DNA of 64,000 nucleotides from Okamejei kenojei (GCA_035221665.1 CM069160.1:8556001-8620000), one strand, 5' to 3'; positions 835 through 61,281 are shown, counted from the stretch's first letter. A program made the numbers and translations. The notes: generated from the letters alone by a model not told the origin.

Positions 835-1556
835 TCAGTCTAAATTTCCTGTATTCAGAGGATACAACCTCATCTCGCAGAGGTAGATGCGGGTGACCCA
901 GGAAAGCAGGGCTTGTCCGGGCAATGGCACCTTCTCCCTGGTCACCCGAAAGCCCTGGGCCTGGTTGAGCCGGCTGGCGGGCTGCTGGTCTGTGTAGGTG
1001 TACAGCACGCACTCTCTGAAGCCGTTGTCCCGGGCGAACTCCAGCACCCGGCGGGTCAGTCTGCGGCCCAGGCCTAAGCCCCGGCATCGCCGGTCGACAG
1101 CGAGACGGAGGAGCTGGCAGCATCCCGGCTGTCCCTCGGCCACCTGTGCCGCCACCACCCCTCGCAGCCCACCTACTCTCCCCTCTTCCTCCACCACCCA
1201 GAACCTCGCCCCCGGCCTCCCCATGTACATCCCCTCGATGTCCGCCATGTCCGCCTCCAGCATTTTCCTCAGGTAGTTGGTATAGACCATGCGACAGGCC
1301 AGGTAGAGCAGGGCTAGCAGTGCGGCGACGGTCAGAAACGACCCAGGCCCAGCGCCCGGCTGGCTACGTAGACGGCGGCCCCAGCAACCAGCAGGAGGCA
1401 GGGCGCGGGTGGCGACCGCAGGGCCCGGCGGAAGGCCGGCCAAGGCTGGTCCCAGCTGACCCTCCGAGAATATCCTGCGGGCCTCCGGCGAGTCGCCGGC
1501 CCGGAACGGGCGCACGGTGAATCGGGGTCATCTCCGTCCTTGTGGGCGGCCGCCAT
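835..1556 (-). pseudogene. NAT8: NAT8/camello-like N-acetyltransferase copy 1, frameshifted as assembled
   Basis: Kozak ATG (GACCATGG) at 1556, TGA at 835-837, AATAAA at 795-800 (minus). Relative to copy 2 there is one -1 indel near 1525 and three +1 homopolymer insertions between ~1335 and 1452, which may be consensus errors. The symbol is family-level only. Confidence 0.75.
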
Positions 1557-1834
1557 GGTCCCAGGGAGCCAGAGTGAGATGGAGAAGCTTCGGCCTGAAG
1601 AAAGGACATGCAGGGGAGAGGGGTCCGGATCTGCGGAGAGAGAAAGGTCAATTGAGACAGAGATTCACACGCATCTCCTCTAACCTCATAGAGACAGTGA
1701 GCAGAGAAACAGACACCTCGGCCCAACTGTCCCATGCACACCAGGTCCCATTTACGTAGGTCTCACCTCCCCACATTTTGCCCATATTGCTCCAAACCAT
1801 TCCTATCCATGAACCTGTGTAAATGTGTTTTAAT

Positions 1835-2050
1835 TGTCATCTATAATCTTCGTTTTCCCAATGTGGCTTTCAAAACCTCGGCAAGACAGACAAGGAAACC
1901 GCTTCGTCGAATACTTGCACTCGTTCTGCCAAAACCTGCTGGGTCTCCCAGTTGCTAAACCTTTTAACTCCCCTTCCAATCCCTACTCCACCCATTCTGT
2001 CCCGAGCTTCCTTCTCCGCCCGAGTGAGGCCGCACCCAAACTGCAGGAAC
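1835..2050 (+). mobile_element. Penelope-like element GIY-YIG relic in each NAT8-like intron (best preserved at ~18040-18270)
   Basis: The copy-6 version translates as VIYTIWCSQCGFHYIGQHRLGNRFAEYL...DLPVAKPFDSPS, matching the PLE GIY-YIG endonuclease C-terminus. Confidence 0.8.
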
Positions 2051-4401
2051 AGCATTCCCTTGCACCTGAATCAGGGGACAGCTTCGTCCCCTCTGTTACC
2101 AGGCTTCTGAACAGCCCTTCCATAAGCTGGGGTACAGTCCCGATTCTCCGACTTACACCATTATGGACAATTGTTTTAGAAATAACAGCAGATGCTGGAA
2201 AAATAGAAGGTATGCAAAAATGCAGGAGAAACTCAGCGGGTGCGGCAGCATCGTTTGAGCGAGGGAATATGCAACGTTTCTGGTCGAGACCCTTCTTCAG
2301 ACAATTCGCCTATTCCTTCAGATTACTTCGCCTATTCCATCACTCCGTAGATGCTGTCTCACCCGCTGAGTTTCTCCAGCATGTTTGTCTACCTTTCATT
2401 ATGGACAGTGAACTTTACCTGCAACTGCAGCGCTATGACGCCGAGAACTTTGCACCTTTCTCGTTGCTCTACCTGTCGAGCGAGTTTGGATTGTTTGTAT
2501 ATGTGTCCCCTGTTGCCTGACCTGCTTTGAATGCATGGAGAGAGGGGTGGGCAGGAGGAAGGGTGAGAGGGAGCATGGACTGTGACGATGCGGAGATTGT
2601 GTCGAGACTTACCTACTGGTTGCTCCCCTCTCCTTGAGGACAGTCCAGAGACTGGCTCCCGCTCGATGCTGGTACCGGCATGGAGATGCGACGCTGCTGC
2701 AAGCAATGTTTTCAATGGAGCTGTACCTGTGCAAATGGCAATAATCTCCACTCGATTTGACTATCCCCGCATGATTTAAATTCCCCTGCCATCAAAGGTT
2801 CAAAGGTTCAAAGGTTACTTTATTGGTCACATACACCAATGGGTGTAGTGAAATGTTTCCTGCCAATTCAGGGAAAACGGCTGTGACCGTCCCCCTTGTT
2901 TACGACACTCCTGATTTCATCAACTTATTTCTGATCACTCCATGGAAAATAATCCCAGCCTATCCATCGTATCCATTGGTGCCACATTGGTGATCCATTG
3001 GTACCACAAGCCTCGAGATCCGGCAACAACCTGGTGAATCATTTCTGCATCCTTAGCAGCTCAACGACATCGTTCCCACATCAATGCTCCAAGTGCCTGT
3101 TTCATAACTTCATAAATGATCGGAATAGAATTAGACCATTCGGCCCATCAATTCTACTCCACCATTCAATCGTGGCTGATCCATCTCTCCCTCCTTACCC
3201 CATTCTACCGCATTCTCCCCATAACCCCTCACACTAGTATGATGGTCATTAACTTCTTGTATTTTTTACTATTATATATTCTGTGAGTTATTGGGTTCAC
3301 GGGCCTGTTTGGAATAATTAAGTAATCAAGCATCTTTAATTCTCACTCATACGAAGAATGGATCAATTAAATTCTTACTTGCAAAAGCATAGCGCATCTG
3401 AAAACACAAAACACCTAAATAATCTATAATCTAGCACAAATTATTATGTTGATCACCACAATACATGCAAACAGACACCCAATGTTCTTAATGCAACCAA
3501 AATAATTCAATAGAAGTTCCTAGTTGAGGTTGGTGCAGTGTCGGGTTCATCATCTTGAACCTGACAGGGGTGCCCTATGGAGACAGCATATTTTACAGAT
3601 CCTTTCGATAGTGGGATGGTCAGTACCCATGATGGATCGAGCAGTGTCTACCACTCTCTATAATCTCCTCCATTATTATGCATCAAGTTGCCAAACCTGG
3701 CCGTGATGCAACCAGTCAATATGGTCCCCTCCGTACACCTGTAGAAGTTGAAGAGCACACTAGCTGACCTGCCGAATCACCTCAATCTTCCCAGGAAGTA
3801 GAGTCTTGTGGACACAAGGAACTGCAGATGCTGGAATCTTGCGAGAACACAATGTGCTGGAGTAATTCAGTGGGGGGGGGCATCAAATCCGGAGAAGATG
3901 GAAAGGTGATGTTTCTGGTTGCGACCCTTCTTCTCAGCGAGAAGAGGTGGTGGTGGGCTTTATTTGTGATCACATCGTAGTGCCGGGCCTAGGACAGATC
4001 TTCACAGATAATACCATCCCAGGAACTTGAAGTTGTTGCCTCTCTGTATCGCAGGCCGACCGGCGTTCCATGTAGTCTCATGACCTCGGTTTAAGGTGTA
4101 GAAAGGAACTGCAGATGCTGATCTAAACCAGCACATGTAGTTGCTTCGTACACCCGAGTTTAAGGGGTCCATCATGAATTGCATATGGGACCAGGCCTCA
4201 GCTCGATCTGCTCCAACTGCCGTCACCTCCACCCCACACCCCTCCACTCAATACACCACCCCTCAAATTCCCACCCCTTCCAACACTCCACACCCCGACC
4301 ATCATCTCCACCGCTCCCCACACCAATGAGTTCAGAGACTATATTTCATTGGAAGGTTTCCTTTATTGATATGTCAACAGCCACCGTGTCACGGTACGTC
4401 T

Positions 4402-5121
4402 TCAGTCTAAATTTCCTGTATTCAGAGGATACAACCTCATCTCGCAGAGGTAGATGCGGGTGACCCAGGAAAGCAGGGCTTGTCCGGGCAATGGCACCTT
4501 ATCCCTGGTCACCCGAAAGCCCTGGGCCTGGTAGAGCCGGCTGGCGGGCTGCTGGTCTGTGTAGGTGTACAGCACGCACTCTCTGAAGCCGTTGTCCCGG
4601 GCGAAATCCAGCACCCGGCGGGTCAGTCTGCGGCCCAGGCCTAAGCCCCGGCATCGCCGGTCGACAGAGAGGCGGAGGAGCTGGCAGCATCCCGGCTGTC
4701 CCTCGGCCGTCTGCGCCGCCACCACCCCCCGCAGCCCACCGCCTCCCCCCTGCTCCTCCACCACCCAGAACCCCGCCCCCGGCCTCCCCATGTACGTCCC
4801 CTCGATGTCCGCCATGTCCGCCTCCAGCATTTTCCTCAGGTAGTTGGTATAGACCATGCGACAGGCCAGGTAGAGCAGGGCTAGCAGTGCGGCGACGGTC
4901 AGAACGACCCAGGCCAGCGCCCGGCTGGCTACGTTGACGGCGGCCCCAGCAACCAGCAGGAGGCAGGGCGCGGGTGGCGACCGCAGGGCCCGGCGGAAGG
5001 CCGGCCAAGGCTGGTCCAGCTGACCCTCCGAGAATATCCTGCGGGCCTCCGGCGAGTCGCCGGCCCGGAACGGGCGCACGGTGAAGCGGGGACCATCTCC
5101 GTCCTTGTGGGCGGCCGCCAT
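4402..5121 (-). CDS. NAT8: NAT8/camello-like membrane-anchored GNAT N-acetyltransferase copy 2 (239 aa, intact)
   Basis: MAAAHKDGDGPRFTVRPFRAGDS..., a long hydrophobic segment, DMADIE..YM.RPG.GFWVVE, motif A 'LSVDRRCRGLGLGRRL', FARDNGF and 'A.RLYQAQGF', all colinear with NAT8/Cml proteins. Kozak ACCATGG. Acceptor ttcttcag at 5159-5161, donor GTAAGT at 6167, AATAAA ~35 nt past the stop. The longer ORF-track start lies in the intron. Confidence 0.92.
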   Translation of the reverse strand: MAAAHKDGDGPRFTVRPFRAGDSPEARRIFSEGQLDQPWPAFRRALRSPPAPCLLLVAGAAVNVASRALAWVVLTVAALLALLYLACRMVYTNYLRKMLEADMADIEGTYMGRPGAGFWVVEEQGGGGGLRGVVAAQTAEGQPGCCQLLRLSVDRRCRGLGLGRRLTRRVLDFARDNGFRECVLYTYTDQQPASRLYQAQGFRVTRDKVPLPGQALLSWVTRIYLCEMRLYPLNTGNLD

Positions 5122-6167
5122 GGTCCGGGGAGCCAGAGTGAGATGGAGAAGCTTCGGCCTGAAGAACGACATGCAGGGGAGAGGGGTCCGGATCTGCGGA
5201 GAGAGAAAGGTCAATTGAGACAGAGATTCACATGCATCTCCTCTAACCTCATAGAGACAGTGAGCAGAGAAACAGACCCCTCGGCCCAACTGTCCCATGC
5301 ACACCAGGTCCCATTTACGTAGGTCCCACCTCCCCACATTTTGCCCATATTGCTCCAAACCATTCCTATCCATGAACCTGTGTAAATGTGTTTTAATTGT
5401 CATCTATAATGTTCGTTTTCCCTATGTGGCTTTCAAAACCTCGGCAAGACAGACAAGGAAACCGCTTCGTCGAATACTTGCACTCGGTCTGCCAAAACCT
5501 GCTGGGTCTCCCAGTTGCTAAACCTTTTAACTCCCCTTCCAATCCCTACTCCACCTTTTCTGTCCCGAGCTTCCTTCTCCGCCCGAGTGAGGCCGCACTC
5601 AAACTGCAGAAACAACCTCTTGCACCTGAATCAGGGGACAACTTCGTCCCCTCTGTTACCAGGCTTCTGAACAGCCCTTCCATAAGCTGGGGTACAGTCC
5701 CGATTCTCCGACATATCTCATTATGGACAATTGTTTCAGAAAGAACGGCAGATGCTGGAAAAATAGAAGGTATGCAAAAATGCTGGAGGAACTCAGCGGG
5801 TGCGGCAGCATCGTTTGAGCGAGGGAATATGCAACGTTTCTGGTCGAGACCCTTCTTCAGACAATTCACCTATTTCTTCAGATTACTTCGCCTATTCCAT
5901 CGCTCTGTAGATGCTGCCTCACCCGCTGTTTCTCCAGCATGTTTGTCTACCTTTCATTATGGACAGAGAACTTTACCTGCAACTCCAGCGCGATGACGCC
6001 GAGAACTCTGCACCTTTCTCGTTGCTCTACCCGTCGAGCGAGTTTGGATTGTTTGTATATGTGTCCCCTGTTGCCTGACCTGCTTTGAATGCATGGATAG
6101 GGGGTGGGCAGGAGGAAGGGTGAGAGGGAGCAGGGACTGTGACGATGCTGTGTGTGTCGAGACTTAC

Positions 6168-6235
6168 CTACCGGTTGCTCCCCACTCCTTGAGGACAGTC
6201 CAGAGACTGGCTCCCGCTCGATGCTGGTACCCTGG
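6168..6235 (-). other. Putative non-coding 5' exon of NAT8-like copy 2 (equivalent donors at 2612, 9214, 12781, 15791, 20002, 21126)
   Basis: AG|GTAAGT donor is conserved in these units and appears as AG|GTGAGT in the divergent copy 8. The 5' boundary is unknown. Confidence 0.65.
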
Positions 6236-7446
6236 CATGGAGATGTGACGCAGCTGCAAGCAATGTTTTCAATGGAGCTGTACCTGTGCAAATGGCAATA
6301 ATCTCCACTCGATTTGACTATCCCCGCATGATGTAAATTCCCCTGCCATCAAAGGTTCAAAGGTTCAAAGGTTATTTTATTGGTCAAATACACCAATGGG
6401 TGTAGTGAAATGTTTCCTGCCAATTCAGGAAAAGTAGAGAGGAAAGTAGAAAGGTACATTGAAAGTAAAAGCTCAACTAGGCAACTTCTATTGAATGAAT
6501 TTAGACCATTGCCCTCAGAACATTCAATCGGGCTGAGTGTTTGCATGTGTTGATGGGTGATTAATTTTATTAATTTGTGTTTGATTATAGATTATTTATG
6601 TGTTTTGTGTTGCATAGAATATAGGTGCAGAAAGGAGGCCATTCAGCACCGCCATTCATTGTGATCATGGCTGATCGTCCGCTATCAATAACCCGTGCCT
6701 GCCTTCTCCCCCTATCCCTTGATTCCACAAGCCCCTGGAGCTCTATCCAACTCTCTCTAAAAACCTTCAGGTGATTTGGCCTCCACTGCCCTCTGTGGCA
6801 GGGAATTCCATAAATTCACAACTCTCTGGGTACTCCCAGGAAGTAGAGTCTTGTGGACACAAGGAACTGCAGATGCTGGAATCTTGCGTAGAACACAATG
6901 TGCTGGAGTAATTCAGTGGGTCAGGCATCAAATCCGGAGAAGATGGAAAGGTGATGTTTCTGGTTGCGACCCTTCTACTCAGAGAGAAGAGGTGGTGGTG
7001 GGCTTTATTTGTGATCACATCGTAGTGCGGCCTAGACAGATCTTCACAGATAATACCATCCCAGGAACTTGAAGTTGTTGCCTCTCTGTATCGCAGGCCG
7101 ACCGGCGTTCCATGTAGTCTCATGACCTCGGTTTAAGGTGTAGAAAGGAACTGCAGATGCTGATCTAAACCAGCACATGTAGTTGCTTCATACACCCGAG
7201 TTTAAGGGGTCCATCATGAATTGTATATGGGACAGGCCTCACTCGATCTGCTCCAACTGCCGTCACCTCCACCCCACACCCCTCCACTCAATACACCACC
7301 CCTCAAATTCCCACCCCTTCCAACACTCCACACCCCGACCATCATCTCCACCGCTCCCCACACCAATGAGTTCAGAGACTATATTTCATTGGAAGGTTTC
7401 CTTTATTGATATGTCAACACCCACCGTGTCACGGTACGTATTCAGT

Positions 7447-8163
7447 CTAAATGTTTCCTGTATTCAGAGGATACAACCTCATCTCACAGATGTAGATGCG
7501 GGTGACCCAGGAAAGCAGGGCTTGTCCGGGCAATGGCACCTTATCCCTGGTCACCCGAAAGCCCTGGGCCTGGTAGAGCCGGCTGGCGGGCTGCTGGTCT
7601 GTGTAGGTGTACAGCACGCACTCTCTGAAGCCGTTGTCCCGGGCGAAATCCAGCACCCGGCGGGTCAGTCTGCGGCCCAGGCCTAAGCCCCGGCATCGCC
7701 GGTCGACAGAGAGGCGGAGGAGCTGGCAGCATCCCGGCTGTCCCTCGGCCGCCTGTGCCGCCACCACCCCTCGCAGCCCACCTACTCTCCCCTCTTCCTC
7801 CACCACCCAGAACCCCGCCCCCGGCCTCCCCATGTACATCCCCTCGATGTCCGCCATGTCCGCCTCCAGCATTTTCCTCAGGTAGTTGGTATAGACCATG
7901 CGACAGGCCAGATAGAGCAGGGCTAGCAGTGCGGCGACGGTCAGAACGACCCAGGCCAGCGCCCGGCTGGCTACGTTGACGGCGGCCCCAGCAACCAGCA
8001 GGAGGCAGGGCGCGGGTGGCGACCGCAGGGCCCGGCGGAAGGCCGGCCAAGGCTGGTCCAGCTGACCCTCCGAGAATATCCTGCGGGCCTCCGGCGAGTC
8101 GCCGGCCCGGAACGGGCGCACGGTGAAGCGGGGACCATCTCCGGCCTTGTGGGCGGCCGCCAT
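7447..8163 (-). CDS. NAT8: NAT8-like N-acetyltransferase copy 3 (238 aa, intact except last codons)
   Basis: Uninterrupted ORF from the Kozak ATG at 8163 with the same motifs as copy 2. A small insertion near the stop changes the C-terminus to ...GNI. Confidence 0.9.
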   Translation of the reverse strand: MAAAHKAGDGPRFTVRPFRAGDSPEARRIFSEGQLDQPWPAFRRALRSPPAPCLLLVAGAAVNVASRALAWVVLTVAALLALLYLACRMVYTNYLRKMLEADMADIEGMYMGRPGAGFWVVEEEGRVGGLRGVVAAQAAEGQPGCCQLLRLSVDRRCRGLGLGRRLTRRVLDFARDNGFRECVLYTYTDQQPASRLYQAQGFRVTRDKVPLPGQALLSWVTRIYICEMRLYPLNTGNI

Positions 8164-11008
8164 GGTCCAGGGAGCCAGAGTGAGATGGAGAAGCTTCGGC
8201 CTGAAGAAGGACATGCAGGGGAGAGGGGTCCGGATCTGCGGAGAGAGAAAGGTCAATTGAGACAGAGATTCACACGCATCTCCTCTAACCTCATAGAGAC
8301 AGTGAGCAGAGAAACAGACCCCTCGGCCCAACTGTCCCATGCACACCAGGTCCCATTTACGTAGGTCTCACCTCCCCACATTTTGCCCATATTGCTCCAA
8401 ACCATTCCTATCCATGAACCTGTGTAAATGTGTTTTAATTGTCATCTATAATCTTCGTTTTCCCAATGTGGCTTTCAAAACCTCGGCAAGACAGACAAGG
8501 AAACCGCTTCGTCGAATACTTGCACTCGTTCTGCCAAAACCTGCTGGGTCTCCCAGTTGCTAAACCTTTTAACTCCCCTTCCAATCCCTACTCCACCTTT
8601 TCTGTCCCGAGCTTCCTTCTCCGCCCGAGTGAGGCCGCACTCAAACTGCAGGAACAACAGTCTCTTGCACCTGAATCAGGGGACAACTTCGTCCCCTCTG
8701 TTACCAGGCTTCTGAACAGCCCTTCCATAAGCTGGGGTACAGTCCCGATTCTCCGACATATCTCATTATGGACAATTGTTTTAGAAAGAACGGCAGATGC
8801 TGGAAAAATAGAAGGTATGCAAAAATGCTGGAGGAACTCAGCGGGTGCGGCAGCATCGTTTGAGCGAGGGAATATGCAACGTTTCTGGTCGAGACCCTTC
8901 TTCAGACAATTCGCCTATTCCTTCAGATTACTTCGCCTATTCCATCGCTCTGTAGATGCTGCCTCACCCGCTGTTTCTCCAGCATGTTTGTCTACCTTTC
9001 ATTATGGACAGTGAACTTTACCTGCAACTGCAGCGCTATGACGCCGAGAACTCTGTACCTTTCTCGTTGCTCTACCTGTCGAGCGAGTTTGGATTGTTTG
9101 TATATGTGTCCCCTGTTGCCTGACCTGCTTTGAATGCATGGGGAGGGGGTGGGCAGGAGGAAGGGTGAGAGGGAGCAGGGACTGTGACGATGCTGTGAGT
9201 GTGTCGAGACTTACCTACTGGTTGCTCCCCTCTCCTTGAGGACAGTCCAGAGACAGGCTCCCGCTCGATGCTGGTACCGGCATGGGGATGTGACGCTGCT
9301 GCAAGCAATGTTTTCAATGGAGCTGCACCGCACCGTACCTGTGCAAATGGCAATAATCTCCACTCGATTTGACTATCCCCGCATGATTTAAATTCCCCTG
9401 CCATCAAAGGTTCAAAGGTTCAAATGTTATTTTATTCGTCACATACACCAATGGGTGTAGTGAAATGTTTTCTGCCAATTCAGGGAAAACGGCTTTGACC
9501 GTCCCCCTTGTTTACGACACTCCTGATTTCATCAACTTATTTCTGATCACCCCTAAGGCTCATTCACTCCATGGAAAATAATCCCAGCCTATCCATCCAA
9601 TCCTGGTACCACAAGCCCTCGAGATCCGGCAACAACCTGGTGAATCATTTCTGCATCCTTAGCAGCTCAACGACATCGTTCCCACATCAATGCTCCAAGT
9701 GCCTGTTTCATAACTTCATAAATGATCGGAGTAGAATTAGACCATTCGGCCCATCAATTCTACTCCACCATTCAATCGTGGCTGATCCATCTCTCCCTCC
9801 TTACCCCATTCTACCGCATTCTCCCCATAACCCCTCACACTAGTATGATGGTCATTAACTTCTTGTATTTTTTACTATTATATATTCTGTGAGTTATTGG
9901 GTTCACGGGCCTGTTTGGAATAATTAAGTTATCAAGCGTCTTTAATTCTCACTCATACGGAGAATGGATCAATTAAATTCTTACTTGCAAAAGCATAGCG
10001 CATCTGAAAACACAAAACACCTAAATAATCTATAATCTAACACAAATTATTATGTTGATCACCACAATACATGCAAACAGACACCCAATGTTCTTAATGC
10101 AACTAAAATCATTCAATAGAAGTTCCTAGTTGAGGTTGGTGCAGTGTCGGGTTCATCATCCTGAACCTGACAGGGGTGCCCTATGGAGACAGCATATTTT
10201 ACAGATCCTTTCGATAGTGGGAAGGTCAGTACCCATGATGGATCGAGCAGTGTCTACCACTCTCTATAATCTCCTCCATTATTATGCATTACCTGTTGCC
10301 AAACCTGGCCGTGATGCAACCCGTCAATATGTTCCCCTCCGTACACCTGTAGAAGTTGAAGAGCACACTAGCTGACCTGCCGTATCACCTCAATCTTCCC
10401 AGGAAGTAGAGTCTTGTGGACACAAGGAACTGCAGATGCTGGAATCTTGCGTAGAACACAATGTGCTGGAGTAATTCAGTGGGGCAGGCATCAAATCCGG
10501 AGAAGATGGAAAGGTGATGTTTCTGGTTGCGACCCTTCTACTCAGAGAGAAGAGGTGGTGGTGGGCTTTATTTGTGATCACATCGTAGTGCCGGGCCTAG
10601 GACAGATCTTCACAGATAATACCATCCCAGGAACTTGAAGTTGTTGCCTCTCTGTATCGCAGGCCGACCGGCGTTCCATGTAGTTTCATGACCTCGGTTT
10701 AAGGTGTAGAAAGGAACTGCAGATGCTGATCTAAACCAGCACATGTAGTTGCTTCGTACACCCGAGTTTAAGGGGTCCATCATGAATTGCATATGGGACC
10801 AGGCCTCACCTCGATCTGCTCCAACTGCCGTCACCTCCACCCACACCCCTCCACTCAATACACCACCCCTCAAATTCCCACCCCTTCCAACACTCCACAC
10901 CCCGACCATCATCTCCACCGCTCCCCACACCAATGAGTTCAGAGACTATATTTCATTGGAAGGTTTCCTTTATTGATATGTCAACAGCCACCGTGTCACG
11001 GTACCTCT

Positions 11009-11728
11009 TCAGTGTAAATTCCCTGTATTCAGAGGATACAACCTCATCTCGCAGAGGTAGATGCGGGTGACCCAGGAAAGCAGGGCTTGTCCGGGCAATG
11101 GCACCTTATCCCTGGTCACCCGAAAGCCCTGGGCCTGGTAGAGCCGGCTGGCGGGCTGCTGGTCTGTGTAGGTGTACAGCACGCACTCTCCGAAGCCGTT
11201 GTCCCGGGCGAACTCCAGCACCCGGCGGGTCAGTCTGCGGCCCAGGCCTAAGCCCCGGCATCGCCGGTCGACAGCGAGACGGAGGAGCTGGCAGCATCCC
11301 GGCTGTCCCTCGGCCGCCTGTGCCGCCACCACTCCTCGCAGTCCACCTACTCTCCCCTCTTCCTCCACCACCAGGAACCCCGCCCCCGGCCTCCCCATGT
11401 ACGTCCCCTCGATGTCCACCATGTCCGCCTCCAGCATTTTCCTCAGGTAGTTGGTATAGACCATGCGACAGGCCAGGTAGAGCAGGGCTAGCAGTGCGGC
11501 GACGGTCAGAACGACCCAGGCCAGCGCCCGGCTGGCTACGTAGACGGCGGCCCCAGCAACCAGCAGGAGGCAGGGCGCGGGTGGCGACCGCAGGGCCCGG
11601 CGGAAGGCCGGCCAAGGCTGGTCCAGCTGACCCTCCGAGAATATCCTGCGGGCGTCCGGCGAGTCGCCGGCCCGGAACGGGCGCACGGTGAAGCGGGGAC
11701 CATCTCCGGCCTTGTGGGCGGCCGCCAT
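11009..11728 (-). CDS. NAT8: NAT8-like N-acetyltransferase copy 4 (239 aa, intact; FWV->FLV)
   Basis: Uninterrupted 720-nt ORF from the Kozak ATG at 11728. GNAT motif A reads 'LAVDRRCRGLGLG'. Confidence 0.9.
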   Translation of the reverse strand: MAAAHKAGDGPRFTVRPFRAGDSPDARRIFSEGQLDQPWPAFRRALRSPPAPCLLLVAGAAVYVASRALAWVVLTVAALLALLYLACRMVYTNYLRKMLEADMVDIEGTYMGRPGAGFLVVEEEGRVGGLRGVVAAQAAEGQPGCCQLLRLAVDRRCRGLGLGRRLTRRVLEFARDNGFGECVLYTYTDQQPASRLYQAQGFRVTRDKVPLPGQALLSWVTRIYLCEMRLYPLNTGNLH

Positions 11729-43609: not shown

Positions 43610-43953
43610 TATAGAAACGTAGAAACCTATAAAATAGGTGCAGGCGTAGGCCATTCAGGCCCTTCAAGCGGTTCAATATGATCATGGCTGATCATCCAAA
43701 ATCAAAACCCTGTTCCTGCTTTCTCCCCATATCACTTGATTCTGTTAGCCCTCAAGAGTTATATTTAGCTCTCTCTTGAAAACATCCAGTGAATTGGCCT
43801 CCACTGCCTACTGTGCCAGAGTATTCCACAGATTCACAACTCTCAGGGTGAAAACGCTTTTCCTCATTTTAGCCCTATATGGTCTACCCCTTGTTCTTAA
43901 ACTGTAACCCCCTAGTTCTGGACTCCCCCAACATCGGGAACATTTTTCCTGCA
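43610..43953 (-). mobile_element. CR1 3' fragment
   Basis: Reverse complement of the CR1 C-terminus and 3'UTR. Confidence 0.85.
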
Positions 43954-46900: not shown

Positions 46901-47175
46901 ACTGTCCTCTCCTCTCCATAGGGTCATCTACTTGTGAGTCTGCAGAGGCCGATCTGCCACCCACATACGGTGCAACGTGGGCAGTGGAAACTGGCGGTGG
47001 TTGGCGTAGATCCATTTCGTGAAGTGCAGCTCCTTCCTGCACGGATTTCCTGCAGGAGCGCCTGTCCAGTGCAATGAGCTCCCAGTTGCTCGATGTGATG
47101 CGGAATTTCTTTAGACCGTTCTTGATGTTGTCCTTGAAGCGTTTCATTGGCCCGCCGGGGGCTCGCCAACCTTCC

Positions 47176-47820: not shown

Positions 47821-48925
47821 CCTTCAATTGAGAGTGCAGAGTTTGTTTAGGGAGACGTGGGTTGGACATGCGGATGACATGGCCAGTCCATCGAAGTTGG
47901 TGCTGCATTATTGTGGTGGCGTTGCTGGTCATGTTGGCTTCCTCCAAAGCGCTGATGTTGGTGCGTTTGTCCTCCTGGCTGATCCTCAGAATCTTTCGTA
48001 ACAATCTTTGATGGTATTGTTCCAGGGCTCAAAAGATACCTGCAGTAGGTGGTCCATGACTCGGCTCCATACGACAGGGTGGGGAGGACAATGGCTCTGT
48101 AGACCAGCAGTTTTGTTTGAGCTTTTAGGTCTCAGTCTTCAAAGTCTCTTTTCCTGAGTCTGGCGTAGGCTCGGCAGGTACTACTCAGGCGAAGGTTGAT
48201 CTCAGAGTCGACGTCAGCTTTTGAGGAAAGAATGCTGCCAAGGTTGGGGAAGTGGTCAACGTTTTCAAGAGTGGTGTCGTCCACGTTTATAGTGGGCTGG
48301 GTAGACGGTGGAGGTTGGTGTAGGATTAGGACCTGGGTCTTCTTGATATTTAAGGCTAGGCCCATGGCTCTGTATGCCTTGGCAAAGGTATTCAGGATGC
48401 CCTGGAGGTCTTCTGCAGAGTGTGCTGCAATGGCACATTTGTCCGCTTACTGAAGCTCCATGATGGCGGTGTTCCTGACTTTGCTCTTGGCCTTCAACCT
48501 ATTAAGATTGAAGAGCCCACCATCAGTTCTGTAGAGGATTGGGATCTCCTGTGGCAGCTTCCAATGAGGTGAGGTATGGCAGCAATGAAGACGATAAACA
48601 GGGTGCGTGCTATGATGTATGCCTGTTTGACCCCTGTTTCCACAGTGAAGGGCTCGGATTCAGAGCCGCACTGTGACCGACATGCCATCATGTAGAAGCC
48701 TCAATATTCTGATGTACTTGTCCTGACAACCCAACCTTGATAGTATGCTCCAAAGAGCTGCCTTTGTTCACGGCATTTTTCCTGGAGTTGGCGTACTGTG
48801 AATAACATGTCTGCTGTACCTCTGGGTGTGTGGAATCCACACTGTGATTCTGCGAGTACCCCCGCAGACAGTGGTAGAAGTAGGTTTGCGAGGACGCGAG
48901 CAAGGACTTTGCCTGTTGTTGACAG

Positions 48926-50787: not shown

Positions 50788-53063
50788 GTTGACAGGATCT
50801 AGATGCCCCTGAAGTTTCAACATTAAGCCTTCCCCCCTTCTTAAGAATGGTCACGATTAGAGCATCCCTGAGTTCTAAGGGAAGTTCTTTTTCAACCACC
50901 ACTGCTGAACGTTTCCTGCTCATGTGCCTGTCCAATTATAGTACAAAATTATTAAATTGACAGTCAAATGTATTGAAACATCAGTGCATTATGAGATCAC
51001 AAGGTCATAAGTGATAGGAGTAGAATTAGGCCATTAAGTCTGTTCTTCCATTCAATCATGGCCGATCTATCTCTCCCTCCTAACCCCATTCTCCTGCCTT
51101 CGCCATATAACCCCTGGCACCTGTACTAATCAAAAATCTATCTATCTCTGTCTTACAAATGTCCACTGATGGCCTCTTCAGCCTTCTGTGGCACAGAATT
51201 CCACAGATTCATCATCCTCTGACTAAATAAATTTCTCCTCAACTCCTTCCTGAAATAAATCCTTTAATTCTAAGGCTATTCTAGTCCTAGGCTCTCCCAC
51301 TAGTGGAAACATCCCCTCCACATCCACTCTATCCAAGCCTTTCACTATTCTGTATATTTTAATGAGGTCCCCCCTCGTTCTTCTAAATGCCAGCGGGTAC
51401 AGGCCCAGTGCCCATGAACAAAAAAAAAAATCTATGTTTGAATATTTTCTGTGTTTTAGTCACAGTCTCCCTCCTCCCAAGCTGCAAGCACTCTGGAGTA
51501 GTGAAATATGAGAAGCTGTTCGTCCAATTAGCATTTAGCCTCATGCTGACAATGGAGGAGACCTTGGACAGAAAGGTCAGTATGGGAATGGGCAGGGGGA
51601 ATTAAAGTGTTTAGCAACCGGGAGATCAGGTAGGTGCAGGCGAACGGAGCAAAGGTGTTCAGCAAAACACTCGCCCAGCCTATGATTGGTCTTGCCGATT
51701 AATAAGAGTCCACATATAGTACAGCACACACACTTCGGCCCACAATGTCCGTGTCGAACATGAGCGCCAAGACCATTTTGTACCTGCCTGTTGCAAGGAC
51801 CCCTCCTTCTTGAAAACTGCAGATGCTGGAATCGTGAGCAAAACACACTGGACTGGAGGAACACAGTTGATCAGGCAGCGTTTTTGGATGGAACTGGACG
51901 CAACGTTTCAGGTCAGGACCCTGATCAGTCTGAAGAGAGGACCAGACCCAAAAAGTCGCCTGTCCATTTACTGCCATTACCAGTATGAAGGCACACATAA
52001 ACTGGGGGAACTGGCACCTCGTATTCTGCTTGGGTAGCTTACAACCTAACAGCATGAACATTGAAGAGAGACATAAACTGCTAAAGTAAGTCACGGGGTC
52101 AGGCAGCATCTCTGGACAAAAGGAATAGGTGAGGTTTCAGGTCGGAACACTTCTTCAGTATGAACGTTGAATTATACAATTTTAGGTATTACTACTTCCT
52201 CTCCCACCCTCACCTTTCTTTTCTGTGCCCCGCATTGGTATCTCACCCCTTTCCACAAGATCCCCTTGCACCCTTATCCCTCCGGTTTCACATTTCACTC
52301 CTCTTCTTTCCTTACCTTACCTGATACACATCTATCTCCTCAAAAACCCCCCTCATCTGCATCCACTTATCACTTGCCAGGCTTTGCCCCGCCTGCACTT
52401 TTTTTCCCACCTTTCTTCCCCCACTCCAATCAGTCTGAAGGGTCCCATTTTAAAATGTTGTCTATCCATTCATTCACAAATGCTGCCTGACTCACTTTGT
52501 TGCCCAAGCATTTTGCGCTCTACTCAAGATTCCTGCAACTACAGTTCCTTGTGTCTCTCTGCACAGATGCTGCCCGTCCCGTTGAGGCCCGTCAACATTT
52601 TGTTTTTGTTTTAAAACCAATGCCTTCCATAGCATTGGTTTCTAGGCTCAAGAGTTAGACTCATATTCGTACAGCATGGAAGCAGGCCGTTTGGCTCAAC
52701 TTGCCGAGATGTCCCATCAATGCTAGTCCCACCTGCCCACATTTGGTCCATATCCCTCGAGACAATTTCCTATCCATGCCTGTCCAAATGTCTTTTAAAT
52801 GTTGTTATAGTACCTGCCTCGATTACCTCCTTTGACAACACGTCTCAAAAACCCACCAATCTCTGTGTGAACAGGTTGACCTCACGTCCCTTTTAAATCT
52901 GCCCCCTCTCACTTTAAACCCATGTCCTCTGGTTCTTGATTCCCCTTCCCTTGTTAAAAGACTGTGCACTCACCCGATCTATCCGCTGAGTTCGCCTGAG
53001 CATTGGAAAGGAGCCAGTTGAAACAGCAAAGGTTAATCCTATTCTTGGCGAGGAAATCTGAGG

Positions 53064-53595
53064 TCTAATCTGAGGAAAGACATTCTTGCCATAGAGGGGG
53101 TACAGAGAAGGTTCACCAGACTGATTCCTGGGATGGCACGACTTTCATATGAAGAAAGACTGGATAGACTCGGCTTGTACTCGCTGGAATTTAGAAGATT
53201 GAGGGGGGATCTCGTAGAGACTTACAAAATTCTTAAGGGGTTGGACAGGCTAGATGCAGGAAGATTGTTCCCGATGTTGGGGAAGTCCAGGACAAGGGGT
53301 CACAGTTTAAGGATAAGGGGGAAGTCTTTTAGGACCGAGATGAGAAAATCGTTTTTCACACAGAGAGTGGTGAATCTGTGGAATTCTCTGCCACAGAAGG
53401 TAGTTGAGGCCAGTTCATTGGCTATATTTAGGAGGGAGTTGGATGTGGCCCTTGTGGCTGAAGGGATCAGGGGGTATGGAGAGAAGGCAGGTACAGGATA
53501 CCGAGTTGGATGATCAGCCATGATCATATTGAATGGCGGTGCAGGCTCGAAGGGCCGAATGGCCTGCTCCTGCGCCTAATTTCTATGTTTCTATG
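53064..53595 (+). mobile_element. CR1 family B-like 3' fragment
   Basis: ORF 53133-53513 and TTTCTATG tail. Confidence 0.92.
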
Positions 53596-54063: not shown

Positions 54064-54206
54064 NNNNNNNNNNNNNNNNNNNNNNNNNNNNNNNNNNNNN
54101 NNNNNNNNNNNNNNNNNNNNNNNNNNNNNNNNNNNNNNNNNNNNNNNNNNNNNNNNNNNNNNNNNNNNNNNNNNNNNNNNNNNNNNNNNNNNNNNNNNNN
54201 NNNNNN
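54064..54206. other. Assembly gap (143 N)
   Basis: Run of N. Confidence 1.
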
Positions 54207-55659: not shown

Positions 55660-55860
55660 TAGTCGGGGGAAATCCCAAGTATCAGAGTCCATTCGCTCGA
55701 ACATTGCCCGGGCAGATCTTGCTTCAAACACGCCCCGCTCGCTTGCCGGATCGCAAACTCTACAGAGCTCTTTCGCCCGGAGACTGGTGACAAGCCGTGG
55801 TGATTTTTTTGCGATTGGCTTTGTTGGGTCCGATGGGCGGGACGCCTCGGTGCTATTGGT
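55660..55860 (+). promoter_or_regulatory. B2M: B2M CpG-island promoter with kB site and S-X1-X2-Y module
   Basis: GGGAAATCCC at 55667-55676. X1/X2-like CCCGGAGACTGGTGACAA from 55776. Y box GATTGG with ATTGG at 55814, 38 nt from the X1 start. GC box at ~55835. Confidence 0.72.
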
Positions 55861-55977
55861 GCCGGGACGCCGGACTGTTGCACTCATTTGGAAGCGGAGA
55901 CAGACGGAGACAGGGTATCGGTGTATGCACCTTCGGCATTCCGGCATCTGCGCGTCTTAAACATATCGATCGGCGAG

Positions 55978-56023
55978 ATGCGCGCTTTCATCCTGCTCGC
56001 GTTGGCGATGCTCTGCGTGGCGA
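55978..56023 (+). CDS. B2M: Beta-2-microglobulin exon 1 (signal peptide MRAFILLALAMLCVA)
   Basis: ATG in the CpG island, hydrophobic leader, and a phase-1 GTAAGT donor at 56024 matching the phase of exon 2. Confidence 0.85.
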
Positions 56024-59100: not shown

Positions 59101-59901
59101 GGAAAGGTGCTGGCGAGCTTCCATGGTGTTGGGCGTACTTTGGGGTGTTGTACCGTGAGAAGTTTGAGCTGGTTGGTCAGGAGAGTGGAGGTACAAGAGA
59201 GTAGAGAGGGGCACAGTGGCACAGCGGTGGAGTTGCTGTCCTACAATGCCAGAGACCCGGGTTCGATCCTGACTATGGGTGCTGCCTGCACAGTTGTTTT
59301 ACATTCACCCTAAAACCGTGTGGATTATATCCGGGAGCTCCGGTTCCCTCCCACACTCCAAAGACGCACATGTTTATAGGTTTATTGGCTTATGTAAATT
59401 GTCCCTAGTGTGCCGGATAAAACTAGTGTCCAGGTGATTGCTGTTCAGCATGGACTCAGTGAACCGAAGGGCCTGTTTCCATGCTGTAACTCTACACAAA
59501 ATTAAACTAAGATGAAGTGTCTCAACCAGAAGCGTTGACTGTCCACTTCCCTTCCACTAATCCCCTCTACCTGCCCATGATCCATATCCCTCCATTCCCT
59601 GCATATCAATGTGCCTATCTGAAAGTCTCTTAAACATTACTACTGTACCTGCCTCCACCACCACCACCTCTGGCAGAGAGTTACCCATCACTCTCTGTGT
59701 AAAAAAAAACTTGCCTCGCCCATGTTCTTTAAAATTTGCACCTCTCACCTTTAAAACTTTGCCCTCTAGTCTTTGACTTTTCCACACTGGGGAAGAGCAG
59801 TAGTGAGTATGTTTTTGACGGGATTCTCAATCAGTGCAGGAGACCGTTGTTTGTGCCAGATTCTAATACGTCCTCATTGTGGTTCTCCTGTACATCCGCA
59901 G

Positions 59902-60180
59902 ATCCAAGTCCGCCACAGGTCCACGTGTACACCTTCAAGCCCTTGGAGAAAGGTGAGGAGAACACTCTCCTCTGCCATGCTAAGGAATTCAGCCCACCCA
60001 ACATCAAGCTGGAACTGTTTGAGGGCAACAAAGTTTTCGATGGGGCAAACCAAACTGATCTCAGCTTTGAGTCAAACTGGAAATTCAAATTGACCAAGTT
60101 CATCAAAATAACTCCCAAGAAAGATGCGGAGTATTCCTGCCACGTGGTGCACATGGGTAAAACCAATATTTACAAACTGG
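59902..60180 (+). CDS. B2M: Beta-2-microglobulin exon 2 (C1-set Ig domain)
   Basis: ccgcag|AT...G|gtgagt, 279 nt, phase 1/1. Encodes PPQVHVYT...NTLLCHAKEFSPPNIKLEL...DLSFESNWKFKLT...YSCHVVH. Confidence 0.97.
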
Positions 60181-61270
60181 GTGAGTAAAGCATCCATTGG
60201 TCACGAATCGTACACAGTAAAGCTTTAATCCTGCACACTTGGCACTTTGGTGGCGCAGGACTAGGAGATATTAGAAGTTATTCCCGACTAAATCACCAAA
60301 AAAATGTAATTCACTCTTTGATTTGGACGTTACATGGTATGATATACTTTCCAGTGAAGCCAGTAAGTTCAATTACATAGATTTGAGGTGAGGTCTGGGA
60401 ATCAAGAACACATGCATGAGAATGCATCTAATTTCACTTGAGGTTGCTGAACCATTGAACCACATGAACACACACAGCTTCATGCACTCTTTATCCCATT
60501 GTAGTACCAGGCCCTTCAGCCCTAAACACAATTTCCTCAGCAACTGAATCATCCTACCACAACCAGAGAGCAGTGCTAAAATACTGTATACCTCATCCAT
60601 GACTGACAGATTATCCTCGACCGGACTTTGCTGTGTTTACCTTGCACTAAATGTTATTCCCTTATCATGCATCAATACACTGAAAGTGGCTCGATTGTAA
60701 TCGTGTTTTGTCTTTATGCTTACTGGTTAGCATGCAACAAAAGCTTTTCACTGTACCTCGGTAGACATGACAATAAACTAAACTGAAACTCTCCAACTGG
60801 ACACCTAATATAAATGCTTAGTTAAATTCTACCTTTGAACATTACCAAGCATCCATTATTATATAAATCACCTGAATGTCTGGGTGAGATTCCTGCCTGA
60901 TCCTCATTTCCAGGTATCAATTTTCTGTGGATGAATTTCCAAAAACTTGAAAAGGTTAAATGTGGGTCTGTCTTTTGGTATAACATCATACTCACGCCAT
61001 TTTCAGTTCTGCACTAAACATGACTCTATGGTTCTAAACCCAGATTGAATCATAGTTAGGATGGAAGTTCAGATAAAGAAAACAAAATCAGGAAGCTAAT
61101 GAAGGCAAGTTATTTTGGACAAAGGTAATGACAGACACAAAAACCTGGATTAACTCAGCGGGTCAGGTAGCATCTCCGGAGAAGAAGGAACAGGTGATAT
61201 TACGGGTTGAGACCCTTCTTCAGACTTGGTCACAGACTAATGATGTTTTTGTTCTCTCTTTCACTTACAG

Positions 61271-61281
61271 ATTCCTTCTAG
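61271..61281 (+). CDS. B2M: Beta-2-microglobulin exon 3 coding part (D-S-F-stop; exon ends 61296)
   Basis: Polypyrimidine tract + cag| ATTCCTTCTAG and donor CAG|GTACGC at 61297. Total CDS is 46+279+11=336 nt (111 aa). Confidence 0.88.

What the first reader, a model, noticed from the sequence alone, without database searches (positions are those of the whole stretch)
835..61281. Young, expanding NAT8/camello acetyltransferase array is the nearest upstream gene neighbour of B2M (candidate elasmobranch MHC-linked system)
Seen: at least eight NAT8-like copies transcribed away from B2M, with no other host gene recognised in the ~35 kb between them. Known: B2M is MHC-linked in sharks (shown in nurse shark), and NAT8-family enzymes are ER/Golgi-membrane GNATs that acetylate cysteine conjugates, aspartate (NAT8L) or proteins. 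Inference: this is a lineage-specific, copy-number-variable acetyltransferase cluster in or beside the MHC. It could serve detoxification, osmolyte metabolism or an immune-regulated secretory-pathway role. I am not aware of a description of this arrangement but cannot search.
Basis: partly seen in the sequence, partly recalled or inferred. Interest (0 to 1): 0.78.

Follow-up and report, generated by a model that had tools for sequence, protein, structure and literature searches.

The report
Skate acetyltransferase gene array beside B2M
A skate-like fish carries a young, partly broken tandem array of membrane acetyltransferase genes about 35 kb from its beta-2-microglobulin gene; such arrays are ordinary for this enzyme family and nothing found here ties the array to immunity.

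Summary
The array and the B2M gene are both real, but the immune reading has no support.

**The array.** It lies on the minus strand at 1-21 kb, in units of 3.0-3.6 kb that are 96-99.6% alike. It holds six full-length single-exon GNAT genes. Three are intact (238-239 aa). Three carry 1-bp indels that could be assembly errors. The array reaches the window's left edge.

**B2M.** It is complete on the plus strand, with coding exons at 55978-56023, 59902-60180 and 61271-61281. All of it lies right of the gap at 54064-54206.

**In between.** Only LINE debris was recognised: 171 ORFs were scanned in Pfam.

**Family.** The genes belong to the NAT8 family, but not to canonical NAT8/camello or to NAT8L. 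They fall in a third vertebrate clade, with hagfish, lamprey, sharks, rays, teleost "NAT8-like 2" and lungfish.

**MHC link.** It is plausible. It rests on published B2M-MHC linkage in other elasmobranchs and on unchecked scan notes of MHC class I genes 112-153 kb away.

**Against an immune role.**
- The array has no exact ISRE or kappaB consensus site.
- Its coding sequence is no more conserved than its flanks.
- Expression was not shown.
- In horn shark the relative and a B2M-like gene sit on different chromosomes.

Continuity across the gap could not be tested. I read this as an ordinary new member of a known kind.

The parts
1..21147 (-). Tandem array of NAT8-family units. Long form about 3562 bp: 840-4401 and 7447-11008. 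Short form about 3040 bp: 4407-7437, 11019-14029 and 14040-17041. A truncated unit at 17047-18261 is followed by rearranged fragments. Bases 1-834 are unit sequence, so the array reaches the window edge.
   Evidence: (blastn of unit 3 against the window)
835..1556 (-). Copy c1. Full-length CDS homology, but four 1-bp indels (one deletion, three insertions) garble the first hydrophobic helix.
4402..5121 (-). Copy c2, intact, 239 aa plus stop.
7447..8163 (-). Copy c3, intact, 238 aa plus stop. A 3' splice-site motif (AG 8237-8236) lies 72 nt upstream of the ATG, and AATAAA is at 7407-7402.
11009..11728 (-). Copy c4, intact, 239 aa plus stop.
14035..14742 (-). Copy c5. It differs from c4 by only 3 substitutions but has a 6-bp deletion and three 1-bp indels. 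It is either frameshifted or mis-assembled.
17042..17763 (-). Copy c6, with a 3-bp insertion plus substitutions and one 1-bp deletion, so frameshifted near the C-terminus. Its 5' flank is about 9% diverged from the others.
18600..18699 (-). Short CDS relic, matching unit positions 185-291 at 84%.
20497..20876 (-). Old degenerate CDS relic: 72.6% nucleotide identity, 41-50% amino-acid identity, no Pfam hit.
22000..53520 (.). Retrotransposon debris: LINE reverse-transcriptase and endonuclease ORFs on both strands, plus SINE-like and short repeats. No other host gene was recognised.
   Evidence: (family D20)
44417..44639 (+). Orphan island between repeat fragments with a kappaB-like site (44417-44426), an ISRE-like site (44471-44481) and two ATTGG boxes (about 44612 and 44632). 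No gene follows it.
54064..54206 (.). Assembly gap of 143 N, in intergenic repeat sequence. It touches no exon.
55667..55977 (+). B2M proximal promoter region with a palindromic kappaB-like site (55667-55676) and two ATTGG boxes (about 55814 and 55856). An ISRE-like site lies in intron 1 at 56113-56123.
55978..56023 (+). B2M exon 1, coding part: 15 signal-peptide codons plus 1 base, followed by the donor GTAAGT.
59902..60180 (+). B2M exon 2, the C1-set Ig domain, with phase 1 at both ends.
61271..61296 (+). B2M exon 3, carrying the last residues and the stop codon at 61279-61281. An inferred 3'UTR exon starts at 61386, with AATAAA at 61567-61572.
   Evidence: the C-terminus ...YKL+DSF compares with skate ...YKLESF

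Best explanation
This is a lineage-specific, birth-and-death tandem array of single-coding-exon genes for membrane-anchored, acetyl-CoA-dependent N-acetyltransferases of the NAT8 family.

**How the array formed.** Unequal crossing-over between 3.0-3.6 kb units made it, and the same process, together with gene conversion, keeps reshuffling it. Some copies stay intact, some are breaking and two are relics. This step is inferred.

**What the proteins are.** Each is a GNAT fold with a hydrophobic helical hairpin inserted near the N-terminus. The hairpin most likely anchors the enzyme in an endomembrane such as the ER, as in NAT8, NAT8B and NAT8L; that comparison comes from established knowledge of those proteins, not from a test here. 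The enzymes most likely acetylate a small amine such as an amino acid or a conjugate, or lumenal lysines. The substrate is unknown.

**Which clade.** The genes belong to a third vertebrate NAT8-family clade that runs from cyclostomes to lungfish and includes teleost 'NAT8-like 2'. They are not canonical NAT8/camello and not NAT8L.

**Relation to B2M.** The array lies head-to-head with a normal single-copy B2M gene, 35-38 kb away across LINE debris and one assembly gap, probably within the skate's MHC-bearing chromosome region. The adjacency is most likely a neutral, lineage-specific accident of synteny, not a functional system.
For: **Array structure and age**
- Units and their identities.
- Copy state, 3 of 6 intact.

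**Protein family and fold**
- GNAT: Acetyltransf_1 at E 3e-15 to 1e-13 in 4 of 4 full-length copies tested. The relic gave no hit.
- The R-x-x-G-x-G motif residues R158 and G161 are at least 90% conserved across 60 family members.
- AlphaFold model: pLDDT 92.8 and pTM 0.87, with helices 50-66 and 69-100 inserted in a GNAT fold. The best PDB neighbours are GNATs.
- The nearest ESM Atlas clusters are named NAT8 family, score 0.98.

**Clade**
- IQ-TREE on 66 rows gives three clades: NAT8L 100/99, canonical NAT8 100/98 and a third clade 100/94 that holds the window.
- The AU test rejects a single elasmobranch clade (p 0.0004).
- Skates keep a canonical NAT8 on another chromosome: P0147 sits on a 193-Mb contig, while the window's nearest relatives sit on a 33.3-Mb contig.

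**Tandem expansion is usual in this family**
- Several members share one contig in Polypterus, Serrasalmus, Hyla, Amblyraja and Rhinoraja.

**B2M**
-.

**Neutral adjacency**
- The array has no exact ISRE or kappaB consensus site, whereas B2M has both nearby.
- In Heterodontus the clade-III gene is on a 98.35-Mb contig and a B2M-like gene on a 74.47-Mb contig.
- Verissimo et al. 2023 (PMC10751288, sections read) state that the genes syntenic to B2M vary among elasmobranchs, except brd2.
Against: - Expression is not shown. No holder run is on record as RNA. In the laid runs only three low-depth contigs (depth 2-4) from two small runs of uncertain kind touch the CDS, and one of those runs is flagged 'probably DNA'.
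- The CDS is no more conserved than its 5' flank between units (2.4-3.5% against 1.0-3.0%), and dN/dS is 0.42-1.09. Purifying selection since duplication is therefore weak or undetectable, and the whole array could be decaying.
- The three intact frames could simply not have been hit yet.
- The adjacency rests on a scaffold join that I could not verify.
- Synteny in other skates could not be examined with the tools at hand, so a conserved skate-wide arrangement is not excluded.
- Simple consensus scans cannot exclude immune regulation.
Confidence: 0.7

Rival explanations
1. The array is a functional, MHC-embedded immune-linked system. Its acetyltransferases would be co-regulated with B2M and MHC class I, and would act in the ER on antigen-presentation components or their ligands.
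For: - The array lies head-to-head with B2M.
- Scan notes, which I did not check, place MHC class I genes 112 kb and 153 kb before the window on the same piece.
- In other elasmobranchs B2M lies beside an MHC-Ib cluster (PMC10751288).
- Mammalian NAT8 and NAT8B are described as ER-lumen lysine acetyltransferases that act in secretory-pathway quality control. I saw this only in abstracts in the search listing (PMC8041774, PMC12423556).
- An orphan kappaB plus ISRE island lies between the array and B2M.
Against: - Units 1-21 kb hold no exact ISRE or kappaB consensus site.
- The genes are not orthologues of NAT8 or NAT8B.
- The copies show relaxed constraint and half of them are broken.
- In Heterodontus the relative and a B2M-like gene are on different contigs.
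- The published account says B2M's neighbours vary between species.
- No paper in the library links N-acetyltransferase 8 with MHC in elasmobranchs: 0 hits.
Confidence: 0.07
2. The adjacency is an assembly artefact. The scaffold join at the 143-N gap is wrong, and B2M and the array are not neighbours.
For: - Every B2M exon lies right of the gap and the whole array lies left of it.
- The right flank of the gap starts in a short repeat that gave about 30 blastn hits across the window. The left flank partly matches two other places. No copy in the window joins the two.
- MHC regions of skates are known to assemble badly: A. radiata was left out of Verissimo et al. for that reason.
Against: - According to unchecked scan notes, MHC class I genes lie on the array's side of the gap within 112-153 kb. 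In published shark and sawfish maps B2M sits next to an MHC-Ib cluster. The order MHC-Ib ... B2M is therefore what one would expect.
- Gaps with an estimated length usually come from scaffolding evidence that does link the two sides. This point is an inference.
Confidence: 0.12
3. The array is a non-functional pseudogene graveyard. None of the copies is expressed or under selection, and the functional member of the family lies elsewhere.
For: - 3 of 6 full-length copies are frameshifted and there are 2 relics.
- CDS divergence is at least as high as flank divergence.
- dN/dS reaches 1.09.
- No RNA run on record holds the sequence.
Against: - Three copies keep complete 238-239 aa frames with start codon, splice acceptor, stop codon and AATAAA.
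- All residues that are nearly invariant across the family are retained.
- Most pairwise dN/dS values are below 1 (14 of 15 pairs).
- The single-base indels sit mostly in short homopolymers. The pair c4/c5 has 3 substitutions but 9 gap columns in the CDS, a ratio that points to assembly error more than to decay.
- Orthologous copies are annotated as intact in Amblyraja, Leucoraja and Rhinoraja.
Confidence: 0.15

Closest known systems
Teleost 'N-acetyltransferase 8-like 2' and the fish/cyclostome CML-like genes (third NAT8-family clade)
   Same: They share a clade with the window's genes at 100/94 support. They are of the same length (about 225-285 aa), have the same GNAT domain with a hydrophobic hairpin, and often occur as several members on one contig.
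   Different: Identity to the bony-fish members is only about 27-33%. No function has been described for this clade in the library: 'nat8l2' is held by 2 papers, and neither title concerns a fish gene (listing only). The skate array is a separate recent expansion.
Mammalian NAT8/NAT8B (ATase2/ATase1) and the rodent Cml/Nat8f cluster; Xenopus camello
   Same: Same family and architecture, with the coding sequence in one exon preceded by a splice acceptor. Lineage-specific tandem clusters are typical: Hyla and Myotis clusters appear. The mouse Cml cluster is recalled from memory and comes from no call.
   Different: They form a different clade at 100/98. That clade has its own elasmobranch members (Amblyraja P0147, Heterodontus P0145, Pristiophorus P0101) on other chromosomes. 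The AU test rejects merging the two elasmobranch groups.
NAT8L (aspartate N-acetyltransferase)
   Same: It gave the best hits outside elasmobranchs in the word-indexed search, at 39-43% identity over about 89% of the query. NCBI labels several of the elasmobranch relatives 'N-acetylaspartate synthetase-like'.
   Different: It is a separate clade at 100/99. The NAT8L proteins seen here are longer (242-390 aa), with an N-terminal extension. The high score partly reflects shared composition, which is an inference.
Elasmobranch B2M-MHC linkage (Ohta et al. 2011, recalled and not held; Verissimo et al. 2023, PMC10751288)
   Same: B2M here is a normal gene of 111 codons. According to unchecked scan notes it lies on a piece that also carries many MHC class I genes, as published for white shark, catshark and sawfish.
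   Different: No MHC gene and no brd2 lies inside this window. Skates were left out of the published maps. The main text of that paper has 0 mentions of NAT8, acetyltransferase, camello or N-acetyl.

Membership tests
GNAT superfamily | Match to a GNAT profile above the curated cut-off | tested here: met
   PF00583 at 52-57 bits against a cut-off of 20.7 in c1-c4.
GNAT superfamily | GNAT fold and acetyl-CoA motif A (R/Q-x-x-G-x-G/A) | tested here: met
   The model has pLDDT 92.8, and its Foldseek hits are GNATs at E about 5e-8. The motif reads R158-G161-G163, and R158 and G161 are at least 90% conserved in 60 rows. The motif definition is recalled from memory.
NAT8 family (broad sense: NAT8, CML/camello, NAT8L and kin) | A protein of about 220-300 aa with a hydrophobic helical hairpin inserted in the N-terminal part of the GNAT domain | tested here: met
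   Helices 50-66 and 69-100 consist of hydrophobic sequence. The nearest ESM Atlas clusters are all NAT8 family.
Canonical NAT8/camello clade | Groups in a tree with tetrapod NAT8, NAT8B and CML | tested here: not met
   The genes fall in another clade at 100/94. The canonical clade (100/98) has its own skate and shark members. AU test p 0.0004.
NAT8L (Asp-NAT) | Groups in a tree with vertebrate NAT8L | tested here: not met
   The NAT8L clade (100/99) excludes the window's genes.
Third NAT8-family clade (fish 'NAT8-like 2' type) | Groups with cyclostome, cartilaginous-fish, ray-finned-fish and lungfish members | tested here: met
   The clade holds 36 of the 66 rows at 100/94. Of the 12 non-elasmobranch rows in it, 9 were named stayed unnamed.
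NAT8 family | Acetyltransferase activity, substrate and membrane location | not testable with these tools
   This needs enzyme assays and localisation experiments.
Beta-2-microglobulin | A single C1-set domain whose best matches are B2M | tested here: met
   C1-set at E 1.3e-15. The best PDB matches are B2M chains 8gm8_B, 6luo_A and 9ch4_B at E about 5e-31. Identity to Rostroraja eglanteria B2M is 74%.
Beta-2-microglobulin | Gene structure: a signal-peptide exon, an Ig exon flanked by phase-1 introns, and a short terminal coding exon | tested here: met
   The coding parts are 46, 279 and 11 nt, which makes 111 codons plus stop, the same length as P0032. The splice motifs are GTAAGT, AG, GTGAGT and AG. 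The exons were not joined for any search.
MHC-linked gene cluster | Physical linkage to MHC class I or II genes in this species | not testable with these tools
   The window holds no MHC gene. There are only unchecked scan notes and literature on other species.
MHC-linked gene cluster | Arrangement conserved in other cartilaginous fish | tested here: inconclusive
   In Heterodontus the relative and a B2M-like gene are on contigs of different length (98.35 and 74.47 Mb). No B2M of Amblyraja, Leucoraja or Rhinoraja was returned (4 hits in all), and no eukaryote genome collection was available.

The most novel reading that the evidence does not exclude
In skates, a recently amplified acetyltransferase family sits inside the MHC between non-classical class I genes and B2M. 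It is retained there because its ER-membrane enzymes modify B2M, class I molecules or their non-peptide ligands. That would make it a lineage-specific accessory of antigen presentation.
Probability: 0.05. Interest if true: 0.75.

Novelty: new member of a known kind. Interest (0 to 1): 0.3.

Why it matters
- **Annotation.** The genes that NCBI pipelines variously call 'NAT8-like', 'CML1', 'camello' and 'N-acetylaspartate synthetase-like' in sharks and rays form one old clade. It is distinct from both NAT8 and NAT8L. No named member in my sample is a tetrapod.
- **Skate MHC maps.** Published maps left skates out. This window gives a complete skate B2M gene model. It also shows that B2M's nearest recognised neighbour on one side is a fast-turnover enzyme array and not an immune gene. 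That fits the published remark that B2M's neighbours are not conserved.
- **Overall.** The finding opens no long-standing question. The arrangement would matter only if the array turned out to be co-regulated with antigen presentation.

Tried and rejected
**Gap continuity.** I compared 500 bp on each side of the gap with the rest of the window, looking for a repeat copy that joins them, and found none. The test is inconclusive. I did not lay reads over the gap.

**Expression.**
- The run search found no holder on record as RNA.
- Reads were laid on unit 3 (6840-9900) with X7, X18, X19 and X3. All four are contigs.
- X3 covers all 30 bins.
- X7 gave two contigs (7492-7666 and 7637-7757, depth about 2) and X18 gave one (7850-8073, depth 4.2). 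Among the listed longer pieces from these two runs outside the short repeats, only these lie on the CDS. X19 has no contig on the CDS.
- The tool itself flags X18 as 'probably DNA'.
- I do not count this as expression.
- The many 'joints' in that output join copies of a short interspersed repeat and mean nothing here.

**Copy number.** It cannot be read from depth, because contig word depth has no single-copy baseline.

**Rejected ideas.**
- I checked whether the 44.4-kb kappaB/ISRE island is a duplicate of the B2M promoter. The two share only the motif cores, a 13-mer ISRE and a 9-mer kappaB. I saw no canonical S-X1-X2-Y spacing by eye.
- I looked for a second C1-set or MHC exon and found none: tblastn with four B2M proteins and Pfam on 171 ORFs.
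- The plus-strand ORFs of 190-228 aa inside each unit have no Pfam hit and differ at their C-termini between units. I dropped them as chance ORFs.
- Rfam gave 0 matches at gathering score.
- The bacterial-type promoter scan is irrelevant to a vertebrate.

**Limits.**
- Ohta et al. 2011 is not held.
- The supplements of PMC10751288, which list genes around B2M, were closed and may already show NAT8-family genes there.
- Rows left out of trees: representatives shorter than 195 aa or longer than 330 aa (16 of 144). One search used 66 rows that I picked by hand from that tree.
- The group for the AU test was named after I had seen the tree.

Full report
**What is in the window**

The window reads as vertebrate sequence, and its closest relatives are skates. 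The best named matches of the array protein are 'N-acetyltransferase 8-like' of Amblyraja radiata (84%), Leucoraja erinacea (80%) and Rhinoraja longicauda (77%). Rays score 56-58% and sharks 44-47%.

The left third (1-21 kb) is a tandem array. The direct-repeat search shows families of five to seven copies spaced 3012-3567 bp apart. A blastn of unit 3 against the window resolves these parts:
- two long units of about 3562 bp (840-4401 and 7447-11008);
- three short units of about 3040 bp (4407-7437, 11019-14029 and 14040-17041);
- a truncated unit (17047-18261);
- rearranged pieces (18487-18699 and 18984-20058);
- an old relic (20519-20876, 72.6% identical).

Bases 1-834 are still unit sequence at 98%. 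The array therefore reaches the window's edge, and its full size is unknown.

**The gene copies**

tblastn with one copy finds six full-length minus-strand coding regions and one degenerate relic. One search adds a 100-nt CDS fragment at 18600-18699.

A nucleotide alignment of the six full-length copies shows the following:
- c2, c3 and c4 have intact frames of 239, 238 and 239 codons.
- c1 has four single-base indels.
- c5 has a 6-bp deletion and three single-base indels.
- c6 has a 3-bp insertion with substitutions and one single-base deletion.

Most of the single-base indels lengthen or shorten a short homopolymer. The pair c4 and c5 differs by 3 substitutions but by 9 gap columns in the CDS. 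That ratio looks more like consensus error in a collapsed repeat than like decay. I cannot tell which it is.

Around c3 the sequence shows an ordinary gene:
- a polypyrimidine tract with the acceptor AG at 8237-8236, 72 nt before the ATG;
- ACC before the ATG at 8163-8161;
- the stop codon at 7449-7447;
- AATAAA at 7407-7402.

As in NAT8 genes, the whole coding sequence lies in one exon behind an untranslated 5' exon, which I could not place.

**Age and selection**

Between copies dS is 0.005-0.056 and dN/dS is 0.42-1.09 (15 pairs). CDS divergence (2.4-3.5%, and 0.4% for c4/c5) is not lower than divergence of the first 500 bp of 5' flank (1.0-3.0%). The pattern is mosaic: u1 and u3 differ by 1.0% in the flank but by 2.5% in the CDS. 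That suggests exchange between units.

The array is young. I see no clear purifying selection since duplication. 'Birth-and-death' describes it better than 'expanding'.

**What the protein is**

Pfam places c1-c4 in Acetyltransf_1 (E 3e-15 to 1e-13), and the relic gives nothing. An AlphaFold model built on a 60-row family alignment is confident (pLDDT 92.8, pTM 0.87). It shows a GNAT fold with two long helices (50-66 and 69-100) of hydrophobic sequence inserted after the first strand and helices. Foldseek finds only generic bacterial GNATs (E about 5e-8). No close relative has a solved structure.

The nearest ESM Atlas clusters are named 'N-acetyltransferase family 8 member 3', 'NT8F2' and 'N-acetyltransferase 8' (0.98). 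'N-acetylaspartate synthetase-like' follows at 0.97 and NAT14 at 0.93.

**Which branch of the family**

The profile search in the word-indexed database returned mammalian NAT8L as the best hits outside elasmobranchs (39-43% identity). I therefore ran the exhaustive representative search, which gave 1311 proteins at E up to 1e-10, of which the best 150 were listed. I built a FastTree of 152 rows and named 30 representatives through their clusters. I then built an IQ-TREE of 66 chosen rows. It gives three well-supported vertebrate clades:
- **NAT8L**, 100/99.
- **Canonical NAT8/camello**, 100/98. It holds Myotis NAT8B beside TPRKB, parrot NAT8, Hyla CML and Dromiciops. It also holds Amblyraja P0147 on a 193-Mb contig, Heterodontus P0145 on a 288-Mb contig and Pristiophorus P0101.
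- **A third clade**, 100/94, 36 rows. It holds the window's copies and all skate, ray and shark hits. It also holds mormyrid 'N-acetyltransferase 8-like 2', Serrasalmus, Hippocampus, Mola, Polypterus, two lungfish genes, lamprey and hagfish.

Forcing all 27 elasmobranch rows into one clade costs 130 log-likelihood units (AU p 0.0004). I named that group after seeing the tree.

Skates have a canonical NAT8 elsewhere, and this array belongs to an older sister lineage. No named member of that lineage in my sample is a tetrapod; 3 rows in it stayed unnamed.

Inside the skates, the window's three intact copies form one clade (100/99). That clade is sister to Amblyraja P0002 and then to P0001. Other Amblyraja, Rhinoraja and Leucoraja paralogues lie outside. 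This fits recent local duplication or homogenisation.

Karmodiya et al. 2014 (PMC4133703; passages read) had already noted two groups of camello homologues in gnathostomes. A search for 'nat8l2' found 2 papers, and neither title concerns a fish gene (listing only).

**B2M**

The ORF at 59736-60188 holds a C1-set domain (E 1.3e-15). Its best solved relatives are B2M chains 8gm8_B, 6luo_A and 9ch4_B (E about 5e-31). The best named protein is Rostroraja eglanteria B2M at 74%.

Reading the sequence gives this structure:
- Exon 2 runs from 59902, after an AG, to 60180, before GTGAGT.
- Exon 3 starts at 61271 and carries the stop codon at 61279-61281.
- The C-terminus reads ...YKL then DSF, against ...YKLESF in two skate B2M proteins.

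A scan of 44000-59900 for a short hydrophobic ATG exon ending in a phase-1 donor gave one clear candidate, 55978-56023. It scores 42 against 23 for the next best, encodes MRAFILLALAMLCVA and is followed by GTAAGT. The junction codon continues as in the skate proteins.

The coding parts add up to 111 codons plus stop, the length of the Rostroraja protein.

**Between the array and B2M**

The large ORFs are LINE reverse transcriptase and endonuclease. Thirty further ORFs of 90 aa or more gave nothing above threshold. A complete scan covered all 171 stop-to-stop ORFs of 75 aa or more in 20.6-59.9 kb and 61.4-64 kb. It found only RVT_1 (6 ORFs), Exo_endo_phos(_2) (1) and C1-set (1, the B2M exon). 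Short exons of an unrecognised gene cannot be excluded.

**The gap**

The 143 N at 54064-54206 lie in intergenic repeats, 1.77 kb upstream of the B2M ATG and 33 kb from the array. No exon or frame crosses them, and the ORF that the ORF listing draws through the N run is meaningless.

The right flank begins in a short repeat that gave about 30 blastn hits across the window. Part of the left flank has two other copies. No copy joins the two flanks. Internal evidence therefore cannot show continuity.

The neighbour relation depends on this scaffold join.

**MHC linkage**

Nothing in the window is an MHC gene, and brd2 is absent. Verissimo et al. 2023 (PMC10751288; abstract, section 7 and passages read) make these points:
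- B2M is linked to the class II region, to brd2 and to a class Ib cluster in white shark, catshark and sawfish.
- The genes syntenic to B2M vary among species, except brd2.
- They left the thorny skate out, because its MHC genes lay on unplaced scaffolds.

The main text never mentions NAT8, acetyltransferase, camello or N-acetyl.

Earlier notes of this scan place MHC class I genes 112 kb and 153 kb before this window on the same piece, and more between 1.6 and 7.4 Mb away. I could not check them. If they hold, the array lies between class Ib genes and B2M, which agrees with the published order.

Against conservation of the arrangement: in Heterodontus the clade-III gene is on a 98.35-Mb contig and the only B2M-like protein returned is on a 74.47-Mb contig.

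**Regulatory hints**

The window has four exact matches to GAAANNGAAA and four distinct matches to GGGRNNYYCC. None lies in the array. Two kappaB/ISRE pairs exist:
- One is at B2M, with kappaB at 55667-55676 and an ISRE in intron 1 at 56113-56123. Two ATTGG boxes lie between them.
- The other is an orphan island at 44417-44481, followed by two ATTGG boxes.

The two regions share only the motif cores. These are consensus matches, and I did not show that either pair is functional.

**Expression**

No run that holds the CDS is on record as RNA. On unit 3 the large DNA-type run X3 covers every bin. Two small runs of uncertain kind contribute three low-depth contigs that lie on the CDS, and the tool flags one of those runs as probably DNA. 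A third run contributes none.

**Verdict**

The immune or MHC-system interpretation has no support beyond position. Tandem, fast-turnover clusters are the norm in this enzyme family. I rate this an ordinary new member of a known kind, with a small chance of something more if the array proves to be co-regulated with antigen presentation.

Noticed in passing
window 44417-44639: An orphan island of about 350 bp lies between repeat fragments. On the plus strand it carries a kappaB-like site (GGAAATCCCC), an ISRE-like site 45 bp further on (CTTTCACTTTC) and two ATTGG boxes about 130-150 bp downstream. This resembles the enhancer A / ISRE / Y-box order of MHC class I and B2M promoters, but no exon follows it. 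It shares the same 13-base ISRE core and the same 9-base kappaB core with the B2M region, and nothing else.
   Followed up: partly
window 55667-56123: The B2M gene has a palindromic kappaB-like site about 310 bp upstream of the ATG, two ATTGG boxes at about 55814 and 55856, and an ISRE-like GAAAGTGAAAG in intron 1, about 90 bp after the exon 1 donor.
   Followed up: partly
whole window: Matches to the kappaB consensus GGGRNNYYCC are far fewer than in dinucleotide-preserving shuffles: 5 observed against 31 +/- 7 expected, and all 100 shuffles had at least 5. I have no explanation; it may reflect repeat composition.
   Followed up: no
window 9489-10396 versus 6434-6833: The long and short array units differ by a replaced segment of about 900 bp against about 400 bp. 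The short form holds a piece of about 130-140 bp inverted relative to the long form. The units run long-short-long-short-short, which suggests that a two-unit block was duplicated.
   Followed up: partly
window 54227-54296, 6856-6899, 8822-8900, 9716-9800 and about 25 other places: A very abundant short repeat containing CTGCCTGACCCGCTGAGTTACTCCAGC-like sequence gave about 30 blastn hits across the window. It produces huge contig depth and spurious 'joints' when reads are laid. Other notes of this scan mention Penelope-derived hammerhead units in this genome, and this may be the same family.
   Followed up: no
window 58390-58450, 59205-59290, 54480-54545, 45000-45070: tRNA-like SINE heads (GGCACAGTGG...GGTTCGATCC) occur in B2M intron 1 and in the intergenic region. 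Rfam gave no match at gathering score.
   Followed up: no
proteins P0147, P0145, P0101: Elasmobranchs keep a canonical NAT8/camello gene on large chromosomes (193 Mb in Amblyraja, 288 Mb in Heterodontus), separate from the clade-III genes. NCBI names do not tell the two lineages apart.
   Followed up: yes
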